Both the position numbers and the translations under genes were made by a program. From Pocillopora damicornis (taxonomy: Eukaryota): a stretch of DNA of 64,000 nt. The notes below the pieces were generated by a model, which made no database searches, was not told the origin of the DNA, and worked only from the letters and a program-made list of their open reading frames with translations. The stretch spans positions 124,001 to 188,000 of the forward strand of contig NW_020846005.1 in the NCBI RefSeq assembly GCF_003704095.1. The letters are read 5' to 3'. The number at the start of each line of letters is the position of its first letter. Position 1 is the first letter of the stretch. Positions 35,843 through 47,850 of the stretch are shown here, piece after piece.

Positions 35843-37421
35843 CTTCGAGTTTTGTATTTCAAATTTAGCTTTAAATTATCCTTTTAAATTCGGCCATAGC
35901 GAAATAATTCCGATGTTTTTACGAATAATTCTGTAGAGTTTAGTAGATGCACCCGACGTTAAAAACGTCTCATCAGGAAAATTTACGACCACGTCTGCAG
36001 CATACACCAACCGCGAATTCACCTCTGTTTTCGTTCACTTTTCTACCAATACTAAAAACGATCAACAGGAAAGTGATAATAAATAAATTATTTCTGTCTT
36101 TCGGCCTCGAACGCAAGTATTTCCTCTTTAGTTTGGTTGAAAAACAGACTTTAATGCTCACTTTTTCCATTCTTTGTACGCTTAGACGTGGTTGTAAGTT
36201 TTTATCATCAGACTAATTGCTCTCCATCACTCTCGCTTCGTAGGTTTACTGTAAATTTTTTTTTTTTCATCAAAAATTTTCAAATCAGGAAGTGCACTTT
36301 TCAAGTCAAAATGGCCTTCAATTCATCTCACGACAGTCGATTAAAGTTTTTTTTTTAAGAAAAGGGAATTATTCATTCAGCTTGCTTATTTCCGAAAAAC
36401 ATTTTTGATTTATTTATGAAATGAAATTGCTCTTCTACAGCCTGTTATGTTATGATGTAAATTTGACATTCTGTCAAACTAATGTGCTTTAGCAGTCAAA
36501 TTTCCGAGAAGACTCTCGACGAAGCGGTAGCTTAAATCAACTATAGATAATTGCAAAGAGATAGGTAATCATTATTGAAATAACCCAGAAAAAGACCTAC
36601 TAACGAGTCACAGATTGTTAGGCAACGCTCCATAAGCTCTATGTGACATTACAAACAAATGCGTGAGGTCAAACAAAGGAGAGTGTTCAAAAATATTTTT
36701 TTGTCAGATATTTTTCTCCATGAAAATGCCGGTATCGTTTTAACTACAGATTAAAGGTCCAAATAAAGACAATTACGTACTACAAGTTTTCTTGTGCTTT
36801 ATTTTAAATGAATAAACACGCCCAGTCCAGTTCTGCCTCTCTCTGATTGTCATGCAATGTCGCGACAGGCGCCCTGAACATCATGGCCATGTTTACGGTT
36901 ACAAAAATAAAATACAGCAAAACAAAAATCCTTCAGTTTTTACTTCAAATCGCCCCATTACTTTTCAATCGTGCTAAGAAATCCGACGGATTTTCTTTTC
37001 CTCTCTATTTTTAGGGTCTAAGAGCACCTGTAAATGACGTATGATGAACTTGTAAAATTTCAACATCTCGTGTACTGCGTATCTGTGTTATGTACATTGA
37101 AGAATATTTTGCTGGCCAGCATCGAGAGGACCAGAACTATTTTATTATATATTGAAACTATTTAAATGACACTCAAAGAATTAAAATTTGCCGGTGTGTC
37201 GTGGTACGCTTAGGAAAGAGCTGGAGAATGAGGTCTCTTAAAGCCAACTTAGAGACGAGAAGACGAATGCTACATAGAAATCATCACAACACAATTGAAA
37301 AGTATTTGTTCTCGTGCAGGATATTACAAGGCCCTGCGCACACGAAGCTCTCACACGTCCACGTAAGCTCGCTATTGAGCTGTGAAAACAGTCATGGCTA
37401 CTGAGTCTCAACAGAATTAGG

Positions 37422-40400
37422 TTACAAGATGGTGCATGCGCTGCTCTCATTTCTTCTCTCTGCAGGAGCTCGACCCGTTGTTGCAGGAGCGGAGGCATGA
37501 GGGGCAGTCGTCTGAGTGTTTGAATTCATTTCTCCAATAATGGCCCGCAGTTCGGATATCTGGAAACAAATTATTGAATTAGAGGATGATCATCTGTCAC
37601 GCACGTTGGGCTACGAAATGATTGTCTCGAGAGGAAGCAGTCCCTGGCCAGCTCCGATTTCGCGGTCAAATTCTCCACTAACTCCTGAGCTTCAAGGACA
37701 TTGGTACGTCAGACCATATGCCAGGTTCACATTTGAAAAGCGTCCTGTATACTGTTAGGATTAGCAATATCGACAGCGTCCAGGATCGAACTTTAGCCTT
37801 CTTGGAAACTGACAATTATGATGGACTGTTACACTTTAAGGGGTGGGGAGGGGGGTAATTGTCATTGACCAACAGCACGGTGGTACATTTTTCAAATTTA
37901 AGGGTGCACATGGCGTTTTTTTAGAGATGGGCAAGGGTTTTCCATGTTTTTCTTCAAAAATTGTCCAATCACTCGGACACAAAAGCTCACCCCTACAGGG
38001 AATAAATAAAGCCATGTGAGAGTGAACTGTAACACACTACTTTTAAATGTTTTCATCGTCAACATAGACAGTGCACATACCGGTACATCACTTTTGCCTT
38101 CGGACTGTTTCTTGTCACAGAGCTGGCGAAGATGATTCTGAAAGACAACAGAACTGAAGTTATAATTGTTCAGGGAGCATTATCGCAGTTCGTCTAAAAG
38201 ATCAACACGTTCCCGTAAGCAGATAACGCGGGTTAACAACCTGCGTGAGGAAATGAGTGCAATACTCTACACTAAAAATAATACTACCATCGACTTTGAA
38301 ATTTGAGGAACTTTTCCTGGTTTACAAGAATTTCCTTAGAATCTCTCCCGTGCTAACTAAGACGGTTTTTGTGAAGTACTGTTATTTTTTTTGTGTGGAT
38401 AACATACATTGTTTTGGATAGGGAAACAATTTAACATGGGGAATTTACTTGAACAGGGTTGGTTTCTAGAAGTGTCCTAAAGATTTTTGTTAAGGGCTGT
38501 TGCCAAAGATTAGTCTGCGATTGCAGGTATTGTTATTGCACCAACGACTGGAAACCTATCAAATTCACCAGTTGGAAGAGAAAACGGAAAGCTCTCTCTC
38601 CGAGAAAAAAATTTAGGCAATCGCTCGGGATGGTGTTACTTTACGATACACTGAAAAATAAGTCATCAACCTACCATTTTGTCTTGGAGTCGTTTGTTCT
38701 GCTTCTTTAATGTTGCATTGTCTGCCATTCCTTTTACTACAGCAGGAGTGAGAGACACCTACAGAACAGTGTTTCACAGAATGAATCAATTTTGCAGTCA
38801 ACATACTTCACAGGAAATAATTCCTGTTTAAGTCTGTTGTGAAATCAGCCTGAAAAACTTAAGGTAGTATTGAGTTCGTGCTCACGTTTTTCTTTAGTGT
38901 TTCTGCTCTCATAATTGCTTTGGTATCTTTTCCTTTCTTGGCAGTTTTGTTGACCGGTTTCTTGTCGACCACTTGCTTTCCCCAGAGCTGTATAATGACC
39001 TCCTTGTTTTTCAGAAACTGGATTAACTGAAAAGGAATAACGAGAAGTGATGTGACTATTTTAATCTCACTTTCCCTACTAAAGAAATCAATGTGACCAA
39101 TAAAAAGGGCTTGAGTGGTACAGTAAGAATAACAGGTAAGGAGTTACACTGCGCGCGCTACGAGCGCTGCGAGCTCCGCTACTACTTTCTCAGATTTCCG
39201 TCATCGGAAAATTATGCTTACATGAATATCAGACTGTCATTCTACTCCGAATATAGTGCACCATTTTGGCTAACCAGTCCCAGGAGTTTCGAAATGACAG
39301 CAATCTTCTGCAACCGCATTACATCATGGCATCCCTTACCCAAGTAATTTTAACTTCTCCGTCTATGGTAAGGATGACACCTTTGTGTGTGAGCATGTAG
39401 ACGAAAGCTACTTTCTGTATTTCTTGTGGTACAGTTTATTATGCTGTACAAGGTGGCTCTAACTTTAAAGTCAGTTCATGAAACCCTAAAATGAACGGTA
39501 CAGAGAAGCACTTTCAAATGGTACATTGTACCTATAAAACTGTTTGGTTCTCGAGTTTCAAAAGTGGAATTGAAAGAGGAAGCATTCAGTTTGAAGCTCC
39601 TAAAACTTTGAGTTACCTTCGGTGGAACTCTCTCAAAACTGAAAGTTCTTTCGTAGTTAAATTCGGGATTCCTTGTTCCAGATTTTACTTCCGTCTTAAG
39701 ATCCGCTTCAAGGTACATGGAATATTTACAGTACACGTCCTGTTTTGAGAAAAAGAGACCAGTCTTGATATCGTTAAAAGGCAGCAGTCATGTATAAAAA
39801 GTGGTGAAATACAAAAACACCGAAGTGTTATTAATCGTCTCACGATGAAGTAACTTCTGATGTGGTTCACGATGTTTCGACTACATTCTACTTGCATTCT
39901 TCAACCGGTGAGGTCCAGTAGTTATGGGTCACATTTTAAGGAATTTTCCCTTTTTCCCCGCGAAGTTTTTAAACTTTTAATTACCAGTTCCCATTAAATC
40001 TCTCTGATGTCACCCTTTGTCTAATCTAAGCAGTAAAAACGGAAATCAATACTTAGATCTTACCGTGTAGCGCTTTGGAATTCCCTTTGCACTCTGCACT
40101 CGCACCACAAACACAAGCTTTTTACCTTCCTGTAGAAGAGAAACACGTACTGTCACATTTCAAATTTCCTCAGCTGTTCACCCCAGGAGCTTAACGTCAA
40201 ATCTTTTGAGAATCCTCTTTTCTTGCATGAGTTATCAATTCCTTACAACGGCCGTTTTTATGCTCTCGAGACGACTTTAACGTCTTAGACAACTTTAACG
40301 CTATCGATGACTGAAGATCGGTGGGTGAGAAAAACAGACAAGACTAAGTAATGCACCACGGCGGAAGAAAGATGGTTAAGAGTTAAGAATTTAGAATGAT

Positions 40401-43400
40401 TTACCAGTTGACTAGGATCGTCAATAAAGATGTCATCTTCTTCTGTGATTTCTTTTCCATTTTCGTTTAAAGGAACGACTTCTACCTACGGGAAAAGACA
40501 CAGATATGCCAAGTTCAAAGTTGCTGAAGAGGCCATAGACGCCATGTTGAAGGCAAAAGGATCGGGTTGGAATGAAAAAGAAAGCGGGACAGTACTTACA
40601 TTAAGATAGCCCAGTTCTTTTCCTTTATAATCAGTGATACTCAGCTGTTCTCTCATATCAAGCTGAAAGGGAAACAAGAAGAAATCAAGACATGTTTGCC
40701 TTAAAACGAAAAATCAGACGTTTGGAAAACATGAGAAGCTTCTGAAAACGAATTGAGGCAATGTTTAATAATGATTTAAGTAACTTGAGTGACAAGTGCA
40801 CGGCATTCAGTAATCTAAAAGACGGTATAAAAATCTTCTCGGTCCGGCCATGTCCTCGTCTATCGTCAATCGGTCACTTTATCAACTTTGATGCGATTCA
40901 ATCAAGTTGTAACGAAATTAAATGGAAGGGTGAAAATAAGAAGCAAGGCAGGAGACTCCGAGGTTTTTTTTTTTATTTAGGCTTTACGGCTACAGAAAAA
41001 TAAAAACGTCTTATAGGAAAAAAGCAACCGAACAAACGACACTCATCTAGCTATTATTGAACTAAAATTTTCGAGACAATAATAAGCTAAAAGGAACCAG
41101 GATAATTAAAAATAAGGGAAAATAACACAGATCATTACAGCAAACAATTATGGCATGCTTACCACATATCCCAGACTCTGCATAGGAACAGCCACACAGC
41201 CAATCAGACTCTCGACATCCGGGCTTTCAGTAAAAGGATCTTTCTCGTCTTCGAGTTGCCAATCATCGCCGTCTTCGAAATTTTCGTACATTTCGTCCAT
41301 GACGTATTTCCTGTTGATAAACTTGGCTTTTGGCCAGAGGTATTCGACGCCAGTTTGTAAGTCCCGCATGACTACGTATGGCTAGCACGCAAAAAAAAGA
41401 TAAAACATCATGCATTGCGAATTCCTTGTTGCATAATGTTAGAATTCAAGATGAGTTTATCGTGTGAAGCGGACAACATAAACGGTGTCACGCTGTTATA
41501 CACAAATTGACAAAATAACACAAAGAGAATGTACCTCGGGTCTTCCTTCGGGGAGTCCGCGAGCCTTGGCAGAGACAACGGAGACTTCAAACGAAACCTG
41601 GAAAATAAGGGAAAGAGATCAGACTCATGACGATTTCTTAGAGGCTCCTTTGGACAAATGTAGCCACACAGTATTACATGCATTGTAAGATACAAAATGG
41701 AGATTCTTTTTTAGTACCTTCTTATCCAACTCTTGACTGATGGCATTTGCTTCATTTACCATCGGCATCAGATCTGCCAGATCTTCTCGTAACAACATTG
41801 CTTCTGAATATATGAAGGCAACAGGGAGTGAATTTCTAAAGCTGGAAATGTTTCCTTCGATTTACGATGAACAGCCAACTAATTGGCTGATGAACGACTG
41901 ACTGACTGACTAACAGCCGACCGACTAACTGACTGACCGAGTAACTTACAAACCAGCTGACCACCCAACCGACTGACTGGTTGACTGACCGACTCACTGA
42001 CTGATCAACTGACATTACATTTCACTGTCAAATGGACTGACTGATTCATCCACCGAAATCAACAGCTACTCAACTCAACATCTTCTTCACCTTTTGACTC
42101 CTGATCATCCACGTCAAGTCCGGCGTTCTTGGCGATTTCCTCCTGCGCCATTTCATATGTTATGTCCGCCTGCTTCAAAGAAGACGACTGCGCCTCAGCA
42201 GGATGATGAAAGACATAAAGGTGACTTGTGCCAAACATAACTCTACAGACACACCCAAAAAAACACATGTAAGACGCAGGGAAATTAAAGTCAGAGTCAG
42301 GTTCCGTTGTCAAATTATTCCATGCCCGTCTCACACCTAATAGCTCCGGCATCACCTGCGTGTAAGGGCGTGCGAGATTGAGCTCTCTCGGGTGCTCTTA
42401 ATACTGGAAGGATTGTGACTATTTTGAACTATCGTCTTCATTATCTAGCACTGAACACTCCACTACATTTTATGAACAGTTCCCACCGGTGCACACCTAC
42501 CCTTCCCCTAACCTAAAATTAACAATGACTTGTTATCAGTTGTTAGGGGAGTTAGGTTGGTTAGAGGTTTATGGGAAGGGTGGGTGCGCAGTTGCTCAGA
42601 TACTGACATTGATCCTTGCTGCTCGTATTACGATCGTAAATTCTGCAAACATATCCCATCATTCTAGCGGGTGGTTACCTGTCCAGATGGTGAAGTTCTT
42701 CTTCTTCGTCATCATCAACCGGTTCTCCATTGACGAGGACTTTAGCTTCGCCAAAGGTTTTGATGGTGATCTTTTTAGAACCTTCATTTTTAATTTCACA
42801 GTGTTGCTTCAGGATGCTAAACAAATGGAAACAACCAAGACGGATATGGAAATAGGTAAAAATTAGGTAATTACATGATGAAAAATATTTATCGTAATTC
42901 GATGTCAATTACGAGTAGTCCTCCAGAAAAAGAAGGTACAAAAGATGTTGAAGATTTCTCCTCCCTGGGGATTTGAACCCCGCCCTACTGCAGTTTCTAG
43001 AACGAATCTCATGCTAATAAAACCGGAGTATTGAGAACTCGTGGAGGAGGAAAATGGACGGCTCGGTTGTCGAGTAAAGAAAGCTGATATCCGACAATGT
43101 TCAAAAGACAACTTACTTTAATCCATGAAGAACAATGTCTGCTGGCGGATCACCCTTTTTGTTGCCGACTTTTACGACTCCTAGCATTTGAAAAGTAAAA
43201 CAAATTGAGATCACAAAAAGCAGAAAAGTGCCATAACCTTTATTCAAGATGATATAGCATACCTGATTTAACCATGTGCACAATCATTCCCGTCAGCTGG
43301 GGATCTGGGTTCAAGTTCCACAGATGAGGAGTTGACTGACGTTCTTTCTTTTCAGCTTCTTTATCCTGATGGAAAACAGGTGAAACGCACAGGAAACACG

Positions 43401-46400
43401 TCAGAAATAAACAAAAATTATCAATGTGCAGAACGAAAAAACAAATACGCAAATGTACTACTATTGAGAGGTATCATGCTCATAGAGTACTCTTCACGAT
43501 TAATATTGTTGTCAAACCAAAACTAAGTGGTGAACTAAACCGCGAGTCAGAAAAACGAAAAATTCAGAAAGAGCTAAATAAGACCACAAAGAAAACAAGC
43601 AAGCTTTCCCAAGAGTATGTGCGGGAAAACGCGTCGGGTACTCGCGTTTGGTTTTTTAACTATGCATCTGATTGGTTGAAGAGGTGGCTATTACAAAGTT
43701 TGTCAAAGTGAAATGGCTACTATCCTAGAACAGCGAAATGAAATCACGCCCGTTGATGCCCGTTGAGTTCCTATTAACTGTTGTACAGCAATACCTTTAG
43801 TTTGGTTTCACAACTCTGGTCAAAAAATGTTCTCTGTGTAACCACCAAGAAGGTAATCGCGGTGTCAAGAAGCCTGCTGGCATTTACGCAACAAAATTGT
43901 GGCCACAATGATTCGAATTAAACACTATTTGAATAATCTAATACAAAACAGTTAATGTTCCACCTTGATATCCTTTTTATTTTCAGCAACTCTATCATCC
44001 CAACTCTTATTCATGTCCTGTGTTTCCTGCTCTGTTTGTGCCATAGATGCTTTTATCTCCTCTTCAATCTGTTTCCTGAGTTCGGCCATTTCCTCTTCAG
44101 ACAATCCTTCCTTCTCGCCGTCATCATCGTCATCGTCGGCTGATATCTTCACAGATTCGCCTGCTTGAGCTTTCTTTAACATTTCCATGAGTTTGTCATT
44201 TTCTTCTTTCAACTCCCTGATCAGTTTCTCTGTAGGATCCTCGTTGACTTTCGCTGATGTTTTGATCTGTTTAGCACGGTCAGCTGTCATAGAATTATGA
44301 AGTTGAATTTTGATATGTTCTACTGTTATGATCTATCAGAACACTCGTACACAATTAACGTTATAGAAATTTTGTTTCCACCGTTTTGCGTAACTTTAAA
44401 AATGATCACAAAATTATTGTGATCATAGGAAGAGAAAACTTAATTTTTCTCCAAGATTCTAAACAATGGCTAAAAAAGAGTCTTAGACTGGTGTCTTGAA
44501 ATAAGTTCTTTGAAAAAAGCCTAAGCCGATCATCTTTTTTTTTTTTTTTGCACGATTTTGCGCTCATAAATTAGTTTAAGTAAGTAAGTAAGAACACTCT
44601 TTATTTAAAGAGGGCAGCACTTTATAGCCAAAAGGCTAATAACCTTGAAGTCTATAAAATCTTTCAATAAGAAAGACATAAGAAGACAGCATAAAACTCA
44701 CCATATCTTAAGGTTGAGAGAGTTTCATCATAGTTTATGTCCGCAGGACTGATGGCAGCAATCTGGTTTGATGAGATGTAAAATTAATTTTTTAATTAGG
44801 ACCTTTAGTCCTTTACACCCTAACATCAGTATGCATATTCTCCACACTGTTCTCTATACATTTCCAAAGAGGCTTACATGGAGAATTTGTTTAACAATCA
44901 AGAGGTGCTTGTTGGTGATCTTCTCCTCTATTCTCATGACTTTTGTGTTTGATTCAGGGGTGATATAGTAAGGAGNNNNNNNNNNNNNNNNNNNNNNNNN
45001 NNNNNNNNNNNNNNNNNNNNNNNNNNNNNNNNNNNNNNNNNNNNNNNNNNNNNNNNNNNNNNNNNNNNNNNNNNNTCATGTTTGTGGCTGCTACAGTCCT
45101 GTTTGTTGTTCCTTCCTCCATGCGCATTTCAATATCTTTGTATTCACTAACAGGCACAGTCTTAAGTCCGTCAGCATAGAACCCTTTTGAAGGATGTTGG
45201 CGCACCCGCAAGCCACCCTTATTGGTGGAAGGGTTCAAAAGGTCACGCACCTTCTCATTGTAGATTTCAAGCATACTGAAAAACACCTGCAATTGAACAT
45301 CAATTGTGAGCAATATTTTACTCCTGAAGAGTTTGTTGATCTCTTAAATCTTTTGTATACATCATGTCAGAAGTCTCTGAAATCAGTTATGGTATGGCAT
45401 CCATCCAGGCATGCTCTTGCATTATATTACAGGTTTTTATTGACAAATAAATCCTGCTGTTGGCATTTCCAAGGACAACACTTATGTGTCCTGCAGAAAA
45501 GTCAGCTCAGCAGCGTCATACAAATAAGTACATAAATACATAAGTGGCAGCCTGATTGATGTCAAAGTGGCATTTGGTGGTCTCAGCACTACAACAGGTG
45601 CAGCAAAACTGGTTTCTTAAAATGGTGGTTGCTTAATTTCCTTTAAAATTCAGATAAACCACAAATTTGTGTAATATCTTTAGCCAAAATTCTAAGAAAT
45701 TAAACAGTACCTCAAATTGTGCCTCATCTCCTCCTTGCTTTTTCTCATCAATTCCTTTGAAAATTTCTTCACAAAAGATTGGTACAATGCCTGTAATCAA
45801 ATGTAGAATAATTGTTTTGGAATTAATTACTTCCCATACAGGGGCAATATTCTCCTTACTAAAGAGATGTGACTACTAGACTTGACAAGCAACCATTGTT
45901 CAGGATTCTACCTTTAAAGGACCTGTAAATAAGACAAATTGAATGTAATGAACTGGGAAAACAGTAGAAATCAAAACTAGGTGAATAAAAGTGAGATGCT
46001 GCAAATGTTAAGTCAATAACACCAAAAAAATAATAATAATAAAAAAACAAAGCAAAAGAAAGAGAGAATGGACTGATGTTACCTTTGTTTGTACCATATC
46101 CAACAATTGACCAAGATTTCCCTGAACCAGTCTGTCCATAGGCAAAGAGTGACGTGTTGAATCCTTCCCAAGCATTTGTCAAAACTCCTTTACCAAGATC
46201 ATTATACACTTTCATCTATAAAATCAATAGACAATCTCTTAGTCAAATGTGGCACAAAAGGTCTGAATCTTATTTGAAGCCTTTTTTTTCCCCTAACTTT
46301 GTCAATCTCCCCTCCTCTATAACAATTTTTTTTTACAAATTCTGTGGCTGTCTGTGATTGTGTGATTGTGTTTAGAGTTTTGTGTGAGGAAAAAAAGGAT

Positions 46401-47850
46401 CAGACTTTGAGTGATGCTTTTTCTACAAAGAGTAGCTGAAATGAAGATCCACATCAATAGCACACCAAGACATCAAATACTGAATTAAAGGGAAAAATCC
46501 TTTTAAAAAAGGGGTGTGGTCACAAGACCCCCTGCCATAAGTCTGTCCTTGCACTGCAAGGAAATGTCATAGTGAAAGAAGCCGTGTGACAGGCATATGC
46601 ATGGGGTCAGGGGAGCTGACACTCCCATAACTTGAGGAATGATTCTGATTTCCACAGGTCATGATTTCCCAGCCTATATACTGGTGAGAAAGGAGCAGCC
46701 GGCCTCCATCCTTGATAGAATCACCCCATCAGTCTTCTCATAAGATCACACTTCTGACAAAATAATTGTTTTCTGTAGTACCTGATCAGCATATTTTGGA
46801 TTGGTAGCTCCCAGGTAGCCGTTTGGTTTTTCTTCGAATCCGTCATGAGACCAATAACTGTAGTCGAACGTGAATTTTTTGGGTTCTTCACCAGGCTCTT
46901 CTGGATTTGTTAAGTACGTTGTTTGACCTTTCATTTCAACTATCAAAGTTGCATTTCGGGCCTTTTCACGTTTATTGTGTGAAGTGTTAAGGAAATCGCT
47001 AGCTCCAGCTTGAGGAAAGCTGTTAGATTGCTCATTTGTTGCTTATCACTGGCAGACTGTAGAGAAAAGTGCAGAGTTTAACGGAGTTACAATGGTCTCC
47101 TTCGAGTGGATTACGAACCCTGAGCGGCCAGCCTAGTAACTTTAAAATAAATCTCCGATCCTTTATTTAAACTTTAACTGGGTTGCGATATAAACACTAC
47201 AATCAAGAGGAATGGAAGTGTAGTGCCTCTGATATTTCCTCTTCTCTCGTTCAGTTGCAAATCTATTGTAGTTCATTATGACCTTGGTTCAGATTTCTCA
47301 ACAGCGTCACACAATCCAAGATACTTGGTAAAACGTTGTACCTTGCTTTACCAGCTGTTTTTTAACGCTGGTCGTATTGTGCTTCAAACTTCACTTCACT
47401 GTGACTTTTGTTAATAAGAAGTAGTCTAAATGAAAATCGTTTAGAAAGTTTTGGTGAACAGCAAACCGTCAGAGACGGTAGATCAATATTATTCATGCCC
47501 TACTGTTGCGTACACAAAAAAAAAACAAGTGTGACGATTGTGCAAACATCTAGACATGAAAGTTAGAACGTAATGAAATAAGATGATAATACCGTTCTTA
47601 GTGGGCGAGGAAAAATTGATGTGGACTGCCATATAAAAAATTATACGGCCAATATAATAATCTAATATGGGATGTCAAACTATTCGAAAGGATAAACTAA
47701 CAGCTACGTTGACACGTCCTACAACCAGATACACACAAACTTTGTCGCACTGGCTGCATTAGGACTAGCTGGATTATATCGTCGTTAAAAGGATATAAAA
47801 GGCCTCACTCTAACGGCCACCTTGACGTTTTCTGCTTCTCCGTCCGACAT
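37422..47850 (-). CDS. KIF28: Kinesin-3 family KIF28/KLP-6-like motor (motor, coiled coil, FHA-like region, C2-like region, C-terminal CaaX). Part of the motor domain is hidden in gap 44976-45075
   Basis: MSDGEAENVKVAVRVRPF|NKRE, FTFDYSYWSHDGF, P-loop FAYGQTGSGKSWS, SMLEIYNEKVRDLL, IAAISPADINYDETLSTLRY|ADRAKQI, PHLWNLNPDPQL, DR|VMFGTSHLYVF, VNEANAISQELDK. Final phase-0 exons 39026-38886, 38758-38675, 38137-38081 and 37559-37422 end ESSACTIL-TAA. Confidence 0.9.
41895..42048. repeat. Degenerate (ACTG)n microsatellite
   Basis: gactgactgactgactaac...actgaccga runs. Confidence 0.8.
44806..44975. mobile_element. TTAA MITE subfamily B, truncated by assembly gap
   Basis: cctttacaccctaacatcagtatgcatattctcc... 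runs into the N run. Confidence 0.72.
44976..45075. other. 100-N assembly gap hiding part of the kinesin motor domain
   Basis: Coding sequence stops at RTVAATNM and resumes at IAAISPA. Switch I (SSRxH), switch II (DLAGSE) and the PYRxS segment are missing. Confidence 0.9.
46977..47796 (-). other. U12-type AT-AC intron (intron 1 of the kinesin)
   Basis: 5' end ATATCCTTTT, branch TTCCTTAAC (46994-46986), 3' end ...CACAC. Removing it restores the conserved VRVRPF-N-x-RE motif. Confidence 0.95.

What the first reader, a model, noticed from the sequence alone, without database searches (positions are those of the whole stretch)
37422..37559. Kinesin-3 (KIF28/KLP-6-like) ending in a CaaL prenylation box: candidate lipid-anchored motor
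Seen: a chain of phase-0 exons (LIQFLK..KKN | VSLTP..LKKQNKRLQDKM | NHLRQLCDKK..DVP | ISELRAII..) ends ...PAERRNESSACTIL-stop, after a short coiled-coil-like segment and an A/T/P-rich linker. No PH or CAP-Gly tail is visible. Known: CaaX with X = Leu is the geranylgeranyltransferase-I signal. Kinesin-3 motors usually bind membranes through PH, PX or CAP-Gly domains, and the well-known prenylated kinesin is CENP-E (farnesylated, kinesin-7). Inference: this motor may attach directly to cargo or ciliary membranes through a geranylgeranyl anchor. I know of no description of this for the KIF28/KLP-6 clade. The ORF track does not show it.
Basis: partly seen in the sequence, partly recalled or inferred. 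Interest (0 to 1): 0.8.

Follow-up and report, generated by a model that had tools for sequence, protein, structure and literature searches.

The report
Kinesin-3 KIF28 with conserved lipid-anchor tag
This coral KIF28/KLP-6-type kinesin motor really does end in a four-residue lipid-attachment signal (CTIL). The same signal sits at the end of KIF28 proteins from choanoflagellates to sea urchins but is missing in vertebrates and nematodes, the only animals where this motor has been studied, so the family probably attaches through a lipid tail that the papers I could search do not describe.

Summary
On the minus strand, four phase-0 exons with canonical GT-AG borders (39026-38886, 38758-38675, 38137-38081, 37559-37422) end in ...ERRNESSACTIL-TAA. 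A spliced mRNA contig from a related coral joins the same exons and ends ...SSTCVIL.

The gene is a kinesin-3 of the KIF28/KLP-6 subfamily: motor, FHA, MBS/KIF1B and a beta-sandwich tail, with no PH, PX or CAP-Gly domain.

The CaaX box is a family trait, not chance. Of 175 non-vertebrate homologues, 142 end in S-x-[AVT]-C-x-[LIV]-[QML]. Cys at -4 is the only invariant residue in an otherwise unconserved, disordered tail, and Ser at -7 is present in 88 of 90.

The last residue follows the paralogue:
- The window's clade has Leu (geranylgeranyl type), or Met in echinoderms and hemichordates.
- A second clade has Gln (farnesyl type). It includes this genome's own paralogue, which ends CSIQ.
- Tetrapods, a fish and nematodes have no CaaX.

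The tetrapeptide CTIL was prenylated without farnesyltransferase in a published yeast reporter. No searchable paper links KIF28 with prenylation.

Lipid attachment itself and the membrane-anchor role remain inferred. RNA-seq from this species could not be obtained.

The parts
37422..37559 (-). Last coding exon (45 codons plus TAA). It encodes a short helix, an A/T/P-rich linker and the end ...ERRNESSACTIL.
   Evidence: Colinear with the end of the related-coral mRNA L004/P0003.
37425..37436 (-). CaaX box Cys-Thr-Ile-Leu (TGC ACC ATC TTG). The stop TAA follows at 37424-37422.
   Evidence: Cys is invariant in 45 of 45 aligned homologues. CTIL was prenylated in a reporter without FTase (PMC11152559).
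37443..37445 (-). Ser at -7 from the C-terminus (three residues before the Cys), nearly invariant in the family.
   Evidence: Ser in 88 of 90 non-redundant CaaX-bearing homologues; at least 90% conserved.
38081..38137 (-). Exon C (19 codons, NHLRQLCDKK...DVP), phase 0, donor gtatgt.
38675..38758 (-). Exon B (28 codons, helical segment VSLTP...LQDKM), phase 0.
38886..39026 (-). Exon A (47 codons): last strands of the beta-sandwich tail domain and a basic stretch.
39617..40662 (-). Four phase-0 exons (40662-40600, 40485-40405, 40129-40064, 39739-39617) encoding most of the beta-sandwich tail domain. Pfam calls it C2-like and the KLP-6 structure paper calls it MATH.
   Evidence: splice sites. (C2, 22.7 bits, at the cut-off). 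(fold of orthologue P0214, pLDDT about 90, matches 7WRG).
41163..41381 (-). KIF1B/MBS domain exon (73 codons).
   Evidence: PF12423, 1.3e-08. (7WRG KLP-6, 1.1e-12). Used as the query.
42092..43368 (-). FHA-domain exons (43368-43255, 43181-43119, 42818-42678, 42244-42092).
43964..44332 (-). End of motor, neck coil and CC1 (Kinesin_assoc).
44697..47850 (-). Motor-domain exons from the start codon (about 47850), including the P-loop exon 46215-46083. They are interrupted by the 100-N gap at 44976-45075, which hides about 100 residues of the motor core.
37141..37146 (-). AATAAA, a candidate polyadenylation signal about 280 nt after the stop. A longer 3' UTR is possible, because the relative's UTR matches 36540-36499.

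Best explanation
The window holds the complete 3' end of a kinesin-3 gene of the KIF28/KLP-6 subfamily, clade A. Its protein ends in a genuine CaaX box, Cys-Thr-Ile-Leu, that has been kept over long evolutionary time. Inferred mechanism: after translation the Cys is geranylgeranylated by GGTase-I because X is Leu. The last three residues are then most likely removed and the new end methylated. The result is a hydrophobic anchor at the tip of a roughly 35-residue disordered linker behind the beta-sandwich tail domain. The anchor lets the motor attach directly to a cargo or organelle membrane, or to a prenyl-binding partner, in place of the PH, PX or CAP-Gly modules used by other kinesin-3 subfamilies. 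Shown: exon structure, stop codon, family membership, conservation of the motif, the paralogue-specific last residue, and prenylation competence of the tetrapeptide in a published reporter. Inferred: lipidation of this protein in vivo, the lipid type, and membrane anchoring as its purpose.
For: Sequence and splice sites. A spliced mRNA of a related coral joins the same exons and ends CVIL. KIF28/KLP-6 identity. Conservation: Cys at -4 in 93 of 120 and 49 of 55 homologues. These come from Cnidaria, Placozoa, Porifera, Ctenophora, echinoderms, hemichordates, amphioxus, tunicates, molluscs, annelids, brachiopods, nemerteans, flatworms, priapulids, arthropods, a choanoflagellate and another non-animal entry. 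Position pattern: a1 is free, a2 is always Leu, Ile, Val or Met, and X is Gln, Met or Leu. By established knowledge this is the recognition pattern of CaaX prenyltransferases. In the 45-sequence alignment the Cys is the only invariant column in the last ~130 residues. The 37 residues before it are disordered in the AlphaFold model (pLDDT below 50). The last residue tracks the clades on a tree built without the last eight residues. CTIL and CVIL were prenylated without FTase, and GGTase-I does not accept CaaQ/S (PMC11152559). The genome holds three prenyltransferase beta-type loci and an ICMT locus.
Against: There is no biochemical evidence for any KIF28. No RNA-seq from this species was obtained, so the dominant 3' end here is inferred from a relative. 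Some species have predicted isoforms that stop just before the linker and CaaX. No polybasic stretch or extra Cys accompanies the box, so a single prenyl group may bind membranes only weakly or may serve protein binding instead. C. elegans KLP-6 relatives and tetrapod KIF28 work without the motif. A 100-N gap hides part of the motor, so integrity of the whole gene cannot be shown.
Confidence: 0.72

Rival explanations
1. The Cys is prenylated, but the lipid serves protein-protein contacts or autoinhibition rather than a membrane anchor. It could dock into a prenyl-binding chaperone or adaptor, or into the motor's own beta-sandwich tail domain, as farnesyl does for CENP-E/Spindly at kinetochores.
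For: No second membrane signal lies next to the box: net charge is near zero and there is no extra Cys. The invariant Ser three residues before the Cys points to a specific recognition or a phospho-switch. KLP-6 is regulated by a compact self-folded state in which the tail domains take part (PMC9314371). For CENP-E, farnesylation affects association with microtubules, not with membranes (PMC3206815).
Against: Geranylgeranyl alone is usually enough for stable membrane binding (established knowledge). The anchor sits on a long disordered linker, as in membrane-targeted small GTPases. Kinesin-3 motors are typically membrane-cargo transporters.
Confidence: 0.17
2. The conserved C-terminal motif is not a prenylation site. 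It is a docking peptide for another partner, or a redox or metal-binding Cys.
For: Prenylation has not been shown for any KIF28. Ser at -7 and Ala at -5 are conserved beyond what CaaX enzymes are known to need.
Against: The Cys is always exactly four residues from the end. a2 is always aliphatic and X is restricted to residues that FTase or GGTase-I accept. Gln is not a usual PDZ-ligand end. The motif is not a PTS1. CTIL and CVIL are prenylated in a reporter.
Confidence: 0.06
3. It is a gene-model artefact in this species. The real mRNA uses another last exon, or the gene is broken, and the CaaX exon is not part of the main product.
For: There are no reads from this species. A gap lies in the motor domain. 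CaaX-less isoforms are predicted in some other species.
Against: All splice signals are canonical and in phase. A relative's spliced mRNA has the same exon chain and end. The exon's coding sequence is conserved down to the stop in anthozoans (Exaiptasia ...ERRNESSACAIL). The locus is single-copy.
Confidence: 0.05

Closest known systems
C. elegans KLP-6 (PDB 7WRG) and rat KLP6/KIF28P
   Same: Same kinesin-3 subfamily and architecture: motor, neck, CC1, FHA, CC2, MBS/KIF1B, beta-sandwich (MATH) tail. The orthologue model superposes on 7WRG at TM 0.82 with 45% identity. The MBS exon hits 7WRG at 1e-12.
   Different: Nematode relatives and tetrapod KIF28 proteins have no CaaX box. Here an extra helical segment, a disordered linker and CTIL follow the beta-sandwich. 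The KLP-6 structure paper names no lipid or membrane-binding element.
CENP-E (kinesin-7), the classic farnesylated kinesin
   Same: An N-terminal motor with a C-terminal CaaX box that is lipid-modified (PMC3206815).
   Different: It belongs to a different kinesin family and has a mitotic kinetochore role. It is farnesylated, not geranylgeranylated. The lipid acts in kinetochore and microtubule association, not cargo-membrane binding.
Trypanosoma brucei KinesinCaaX (CVIM)
   Same: A kinesin shown experimentally to be farnesylated at a conserved C-terminal CaaX that is needed for function (PMC3206815).
   Different: It is restricted to kinetoplastids, is unrelated to kinesin-3, and has a conserved extra Cys upstream (possible palmitoylation) that KIF28 lacks.
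KIF1A/UNC-104 (PH), KIF16B (PX) and KIF13 (CAP-Gly) tails
   Same: Kinesin-3 motors that need a C-terminal element to attach to cargo. PH and PX bind membrane lipids directly.
   Different: Those are folded lipid- or protein-binding domains. Here the proposed attachment is a covalent isoprenoid on a disordered tail. None of these domains is found in the gene.
Geranylgeranylated CaaL proteins (Rho/Rac/Rap GTPases, G-gamma subunits; human proteins ending CTIL or CVIL)
   Same: The same terminal signal. CTIL and CVIL taken from human proteins were prenylated in yeast without FTase (PMC11152559). The signal likewise sits on a flexible hydrophilic linker.
   Different: Those are small signalling proteins, often with a polybasic or palmitoyl second signal. 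This is a motor of about 1000 residues without such a second signal.

Membership tests
Kinesin-3, KIF28/KLP-6 subfamily | N-terminal kinesin motor domain with P-loop | tested here: met
   PF00225 matches two exons (6e-10 and 3e-16). A GQTGSGKS exon lies at 46215-46083. The motor core is partly hidden by the N gap.
Kinesin-3, KIF28/KLP-6 subfamily | FHA domain after the neck and CC1 | tested here: met
   One exon alone gives a weak FHA hit (0.008). PF00498 is in the precomputed list of the colinear relative P0003. The FHA strands are modelled in P0214.
Kinesin-3, KIF28/KLP-6 subfamily | MBS/KIF1B domain closest to KLP-6 | tested here: met
   PF12423 at 1.3e-08. The only significant PDB hit is 7WRG, 1.1e-12.
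Kinesin-3, KIF28/KLP-6 subfamily | Beta-sandwich (MATH-like) tail domain packed on the MBS, and whole-chain similarity to KLP-6 | tested here: met
   Tested on the close orthologue P0214, not on the joined window protein. Residues 713-858 have pLDDT about 90. Foldseek finds 7WRG at E 1e-83, TM 0.82.
Kinesin-3, KIF28/KLP-6 subfamily | Groups with proteins annotated KIF28/KIF28P rather than KIF1, KIF13, KIF14 or KIF16 | tested here: met
   The best relatives of the exons are P0003, P0214 and Exaiptasia P0195. These lie in clade A of a tree of proteins that sources name KIF28P. No outgroup kinesin-3 was in the tree.
CaaX substrates of GGTase-I | Cys exactly four residues from the C-terminus | tested here: met
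   TGC at 37436-37434, stop at 37424-37422.
CaaX substrates of GGTase-I | Aliphatic a2 and X = Leu (or Phe) | tested here: met
   a2 is Ile and X is Leu. All anthozoan, placozoan, mollusc, annelid, brachiopod and chelicerate clade-A members sampled in the tree also end in Leu.
CaaX substrates of GGTase-I | Flexible, hydrophilic linker before the box | tested here: met
   The A/T/P/S-rich sequence is seen directly. Residues 948-984 of the orthologue have pLDDT below 50 and no secondary structure. Polar or small residues make up 0.87 of the linker in the Leu group.
CaaX substrates of GGTase-I | Motif conserved among orthologues | tested here: met
   142 of 175 non-vertebrate homologues carry it. 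The Cys is invariant in alignment A1.
CaaX substrates of GGTase-I | The tetrapeptide is accepted by the enzyme | not testable with these tools
   Literature only: Ydj1-CTIL and Ydj1-CVIL still shift without FTase (PMC11152559). PrePS was not available.
CaaX substrates of GGTase-I | Covalent geranylgeranyl group on the protein in vivo | not testable with these tools
   This needs labelling or mass spectrometry.
CaaX substrates of GGTase-I | Prenylation and processing enzymes encoded in the genome | tested here: inconclusive
   There are three loci with PF00432 beta-subunit repeats and one ICMT locus. Which locus is the GGTase-I beta subunit was not resolved.
CENP-E-type farnesylated kinesin (kinesin-7) | Kinesin-7 motor with a long coiled-coil stalk and a kinetochore-binding tail | tested here: not met
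   The domain set and structure match kinesin-3 KLP-6. Only the presence of a CaaX is shared.

The most novel reading that the evidence does not exclude
KIF28 motors are ancestrally lipid-anchored kinesins, and the kind of lipid is part of their identity. An old duplication produced a geranylgeranyl-type paralogue (CaaL, the window gene) and a farnesyl-only paralogue (CaaQ, on contig C308 of this genome), and the two lipids sort the motors to different membranes or prenyl-binding carriers. The invariant Ser three residues before the Cys is a phospho-switch. Alternative last exons turn the anchor on, off or over to another type. Vertebrates and nematodes lost the anchor, which is why it went unnoticed.
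Probability: 0.3. Interest if true: 0.8.

Novelty: new variant of a known kind. Interest (0 to 1): 0.66.

Why it matters
How KIF28/KLP-6 motors bind cargo is not known, and the KLP-6 structure paper only guesses at the MBS or MATH domains. A covalent isoprenoid anchor kept since before animals arose, with a paralogue-specific choice of lipid type, gives a concrete and cheap-to-test attachment mechanism for a whole kinesin-3 subfamily. It would also add a transport motor to the short list of prenylated kinesins (CENP-E and trypanosome KinesinCaaX). It explains the blind spot in the literature, because the two models studied, rat and C. elegans, are among the lineages that lost the motif. It also points to tractable systems that still have it: Nematostella or Exaiptasia, sea urchin, amphioxus and Ciona-like tunicates.

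Tried and rejected
- **Exact DNA pattern.** A 30-base pattern from the end of the last exon found nothing in metagenome contigs.
- **Joined sequences left out.** Exons were searched one by one by reference, and database orthologues (P0003, P0214, P0195) stood in for the whole protein in the alignment, tree and structure.
- **Chance CaaX.** Rejected on conservation.
- **PDZ ligand or PTS1.** Rejected: Gln, Met and Leu ends with a fixed Cys at -4 and aliphatic a2 do not fit either.
- **Second membrane signal.** I looked for a polybasic run or a palmitoylatable Cys and found none.
- **Second copy of the last exon in the genome.** None was found.
- **PH, PX or CAP-Gly in the tail.** None was found.
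- **Literature.** KIF28 with 'prenylation', 'farnesyl' or 'CAAX', and phrases such as 'prenylated kinesin', returned nothing relevant. The main text of the PRENbase paper has no kinesin, and no supplements are held for it.
- **Human fragment.** One hit of the representative search (P0141) is a human fragment. It was not used further.
- **Assembly gap.** The N gap in the motor domain was not filled.
Full report
**1. What is in the sequence**

The finding lies on the minus strand.
- Window 37559-37422 follows a pyrimidine tract and a cag acceptor. It reads 45 codons ending ...ERRNESSACTIL, then TAA.
- Three exons upstream are all phase 0 with GT donors and AG acceptors: 39026-38886, 38758-38675 and 38137-38081.
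- An AATAAA lies about 280 nt after the stop.
- No competing gene is evident on either strand. Only short ORFs without matches overlap the exon.

**2. The whole gene**

Open stretches on the minus strand from about 47850 to 37422 encode the following:
- a kinesin motor, with the P-loop exon at 46215-46083;
- neck and Kinesin_assoc;
- FHA;
- a KIF1B/MBS exon at 41381-41163;
- five phase-0 exons of a beta-sandwich domain, which Pfam scores as C2-like at its cut-off.

The KIF1B exon has one significant PDB match, the full-length C. elegans KLP-6 structure 7WRG (1.1e-12). An FHA-region exon also hits 7WRG. No PH, PX or CAP-Gly domain was found in the exons or in the precomputed Pfam lists of the orthologues.

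A 100-N gap at 44976-45075 falls inside the motor. About 100 residues of the motor core have no counterpart in the window. I did not fill it.

**3. Is the last exon really used?**

An exact 30-base pattern from the exon end found nothing in metagenome contigs.

Indirect transcript evidence is good.
- P0003 is encoded without introns on a 3.4-kb JGI metatranscriptome contig, L004.
- tblastn and blastn of P0003/L004 against the window are colinear exon by exon. Query coordinates adjoin across 38758-38675 | 38137-38081 | 37559-37425, and the protein ends ...SSTCVIL-stop.

So a related coral splices the same chain and has the same kind of end. Orthologues from the databases stood in for it.

**4. 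The CaaX box is a family trait**

- Of the long proteins among the 150 representatives, about half ended in Cys-x-x-x.
- Sources name these proteins KIF28 or KIF28P. They come from sea urchin, sea cucumber, horseshoe crab, snail, brachiopod, millipede and a choanoflagellate.
- Two word searches with the tails of a sea-urchin and an amphioxus protein added more: 93 of 120 and 49 of 55 end in a CaaX box.
- The taxa span cnidarians, Trichoplax, sponges, a ctenophore, echinoderms, hemichordates, amphioxus, tunicates, molluscs, annelids, nemerteans, flatworms, a priapulid, arthropods, a choanoflagellate and another non-animal EukProt entry.
- Most exceptions are truncated models or predicted second isoforms that stop right after the equivalent of exon C.

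Counts at each of the last 14 positions, from 90 non-redundant ends:

| Position from C-terminus | Residues found |
|---|---|
| -7 | Ser in 88 of 90 |
| -5 | Ala 55, Val 14, Thr 10 |
| -4 | Cys in 90 of 90 |
| -3 (a1) | free |
| -2 (a2) | only Leu, Ile, Val or Met |
| -1 (X) | Gln 44, Met 22, Leu 21 |

A tolerant a1, an aliphatic a2 and an enzyme-determining X are the known recognition rules of CaaX prenyltransferases (established knowledge). In a 45-sequence alignment the Cys is the only invariant column in the last ~130 residues.

**5. The lipid type follows the paralogue**

I built a tree of 72 proteins without their last eight residues.

| Clade | Support (SH-aLRT) | Members | Last residue |
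|---|---|---|---|
| A | 98 | the window gene's closest relatives, other anthozoans, Trichoplax, a sponge, lophotrochozoans, chelicerates, ambulacrarians | Leu; Met in echinoderms and hemichordates |
| B | 93 | cnidarians, amphioxus, echinoderms, lophotrochozoans and others | almost always Gln |
| Third group | 95 | vertebrate KIF28 with a nemertean and a sea-cucumber protein | vertebrates have no CaaX |

- This genome has its own clade-B gene on contig C308. Its last exon ends ...SSTCSIQ-stop.
- None of the 119 vertebrate proteins listed (tetrapods and one fish) has a family-type CaaX. They end like ...KKKRECLLHSE or ...KKKRESIA. Four end in Cys-x-x-x by the bare test, two on truncated models and two as CSKP, without the family motif.
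- Nematode relatives also have none.
- The tree is unrooted and has no outgroup kinesin-3, so the order of gains and losses is not settled.

**6. Is CTIL a working signal?**

In a published yeast reporter study, all CaaL/I/M variants except CSFL were prenylated. CTIL and CVIL still shifted when FTase was absent, meaning they are geranylgeranylated or alternately prenylated. Human GGTase-I did not take CaaS/Q ends (PMC11152559). This fits geranylgeranyl for the window gene and farnesyl only for the Gln paralogue.

The genome has three loci with prenyltransferase beta-subunit repeats and an ICMT locus. Which locus is the GGTase-I subunit was not resolved.

**7. Structural context**

I ran AlphaFold2 on the close full-length orthologue P0214 with the 45-row alignment (mean pLDDT 74).
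- The beta-sandwich at 713-858 has pLDDT about 90.
- Helices lie at 875-927 and 935-943.
- Residues 948-984 are a disordered stretch running up to the box.
- Foldseek places the model on full-length KLP-6 (7WRG) at E 1e-83, TM 0.82 and 45% identity.

The KLP-6 paper calls the beta-sandwich a MATH domain. It proposes cargo binding through MBS and/or MATH and names no lipid-binding element (PMC9314371).

No polybasic run or extra Cys accompanies the box in any group.

**8. Interpretation**

Most likely (0.72) the protein is geranylgeranylated at Cys -4 and uses the lipid, on a flexible tether, to attach to cargo membranes.

Rivals:
- The lipid serves a protein contact or autoinhibition (0.17).
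- The motif does something other than prenylation (0.06).
- In this species the exon is not in the main transcript (0.05).

Lipidation, lipid type and membrane role are inferences. Exon structure, family membership and conservation are shown.

**9. Novelty**

Prenylated kinesins are known: CENP-E, and T. brucei KinesinCaaX (PMC3206815). Searches of about 8.4 million full texts found no paper linking KIF28/KLP6 to CAAX, farnesyl or prenylation. The main text of the PRENbase paper mentions no kinesin.

The likely reason is that the two studied members, rat and C. elegans, belong to lineages without the motif. I rate this a new variant of a known kind, of real interest to motor-protein specialists and easy to test.

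The assembly size and contig count fit Pocillopora damicornis from memory only.

Noticed in passing
G000:C308:61937-82059 (+); last exon in L012 (G000:C308:81700-82300): A second KIF28 paralogue lies in the same genome. Its last exon ends ...DGKITSSTCSIQ-stop, a farnesyl-type CaaQ box, and it belongs to clade B with Stylophora, Porites, Hydra and Clytia.
   Followed up: partly
window 44976-45075: A 100-N gap lies inside the kinesin motor domain. About 100 residues of the motor core (the region of switch I/II in orthologue P0214, residues 215-322) have no counterpart in the window. I did not fill it.
   Followed up: partly
proteins P0097, P0154-P0159 (Apostichopus japonicus KIF28 isoforms): Isoforms X1/X3/X5 end SKACIVQ and X2/X4/X6 end SSRMCVVM. 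This looks like alternative last exons, each carrying its own CaaX box of a different type.
   Followed up: no
proteins P0152, P0193, P0199, P0203, P0204: Predicted second isoforms in a snail, a chiton, a barnacle and unnamed transcripts stop at ...EKGK(H), right after the equivalent of exon C. They would lack the linker and CaaX, so the anchor might be switched off by 3'-end choice.
   Followed up: no
proteins P0347-P0465 (vertebrate KIF28): Vertebrate KIF28 proteins lack the CaaX. Many mammals end KKKRE-C-L-L-H-x-E, a polybasic run followed by Cys-Leu-Leu-His two residues short of the end. This could be a relic of a CaaX box.
   Followed up: no
window 37443-37445 and alignment A1: Ser three residues before the prenyl-Cys is nearly invariant across the family (88 of 90), more than CaaX enzymes are known to need. 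A phospho-switch or partner contact is possible.
   Followed up: no
window about 55700-53886 (-): The upstream neighbour on the same strand is an inositol monophosphatase family gene (PF00459, 3e-21 on the last large exon).
   Followed up: partly
window about 52659-50963 (-): Short exons between the two genes read like a prefoldin subunit (by eye only). Pfam gave no hit on two single exons.
   Followed up: partly
window 38886-41381 (-): All nine exons from the KIF1B/MBS exon to the stop are phase 0, so skipping any of them would keep the reading frame.
   Followed up: no
G000:C1365:250027-251022 (-): A full-length prenyltransferase beta-subunit match (PF00432, 7e-113) lies in a single open frame of 467 codons, so it appears intron-less. 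The other two beta-type loci are split into exons.
   Followed up: no
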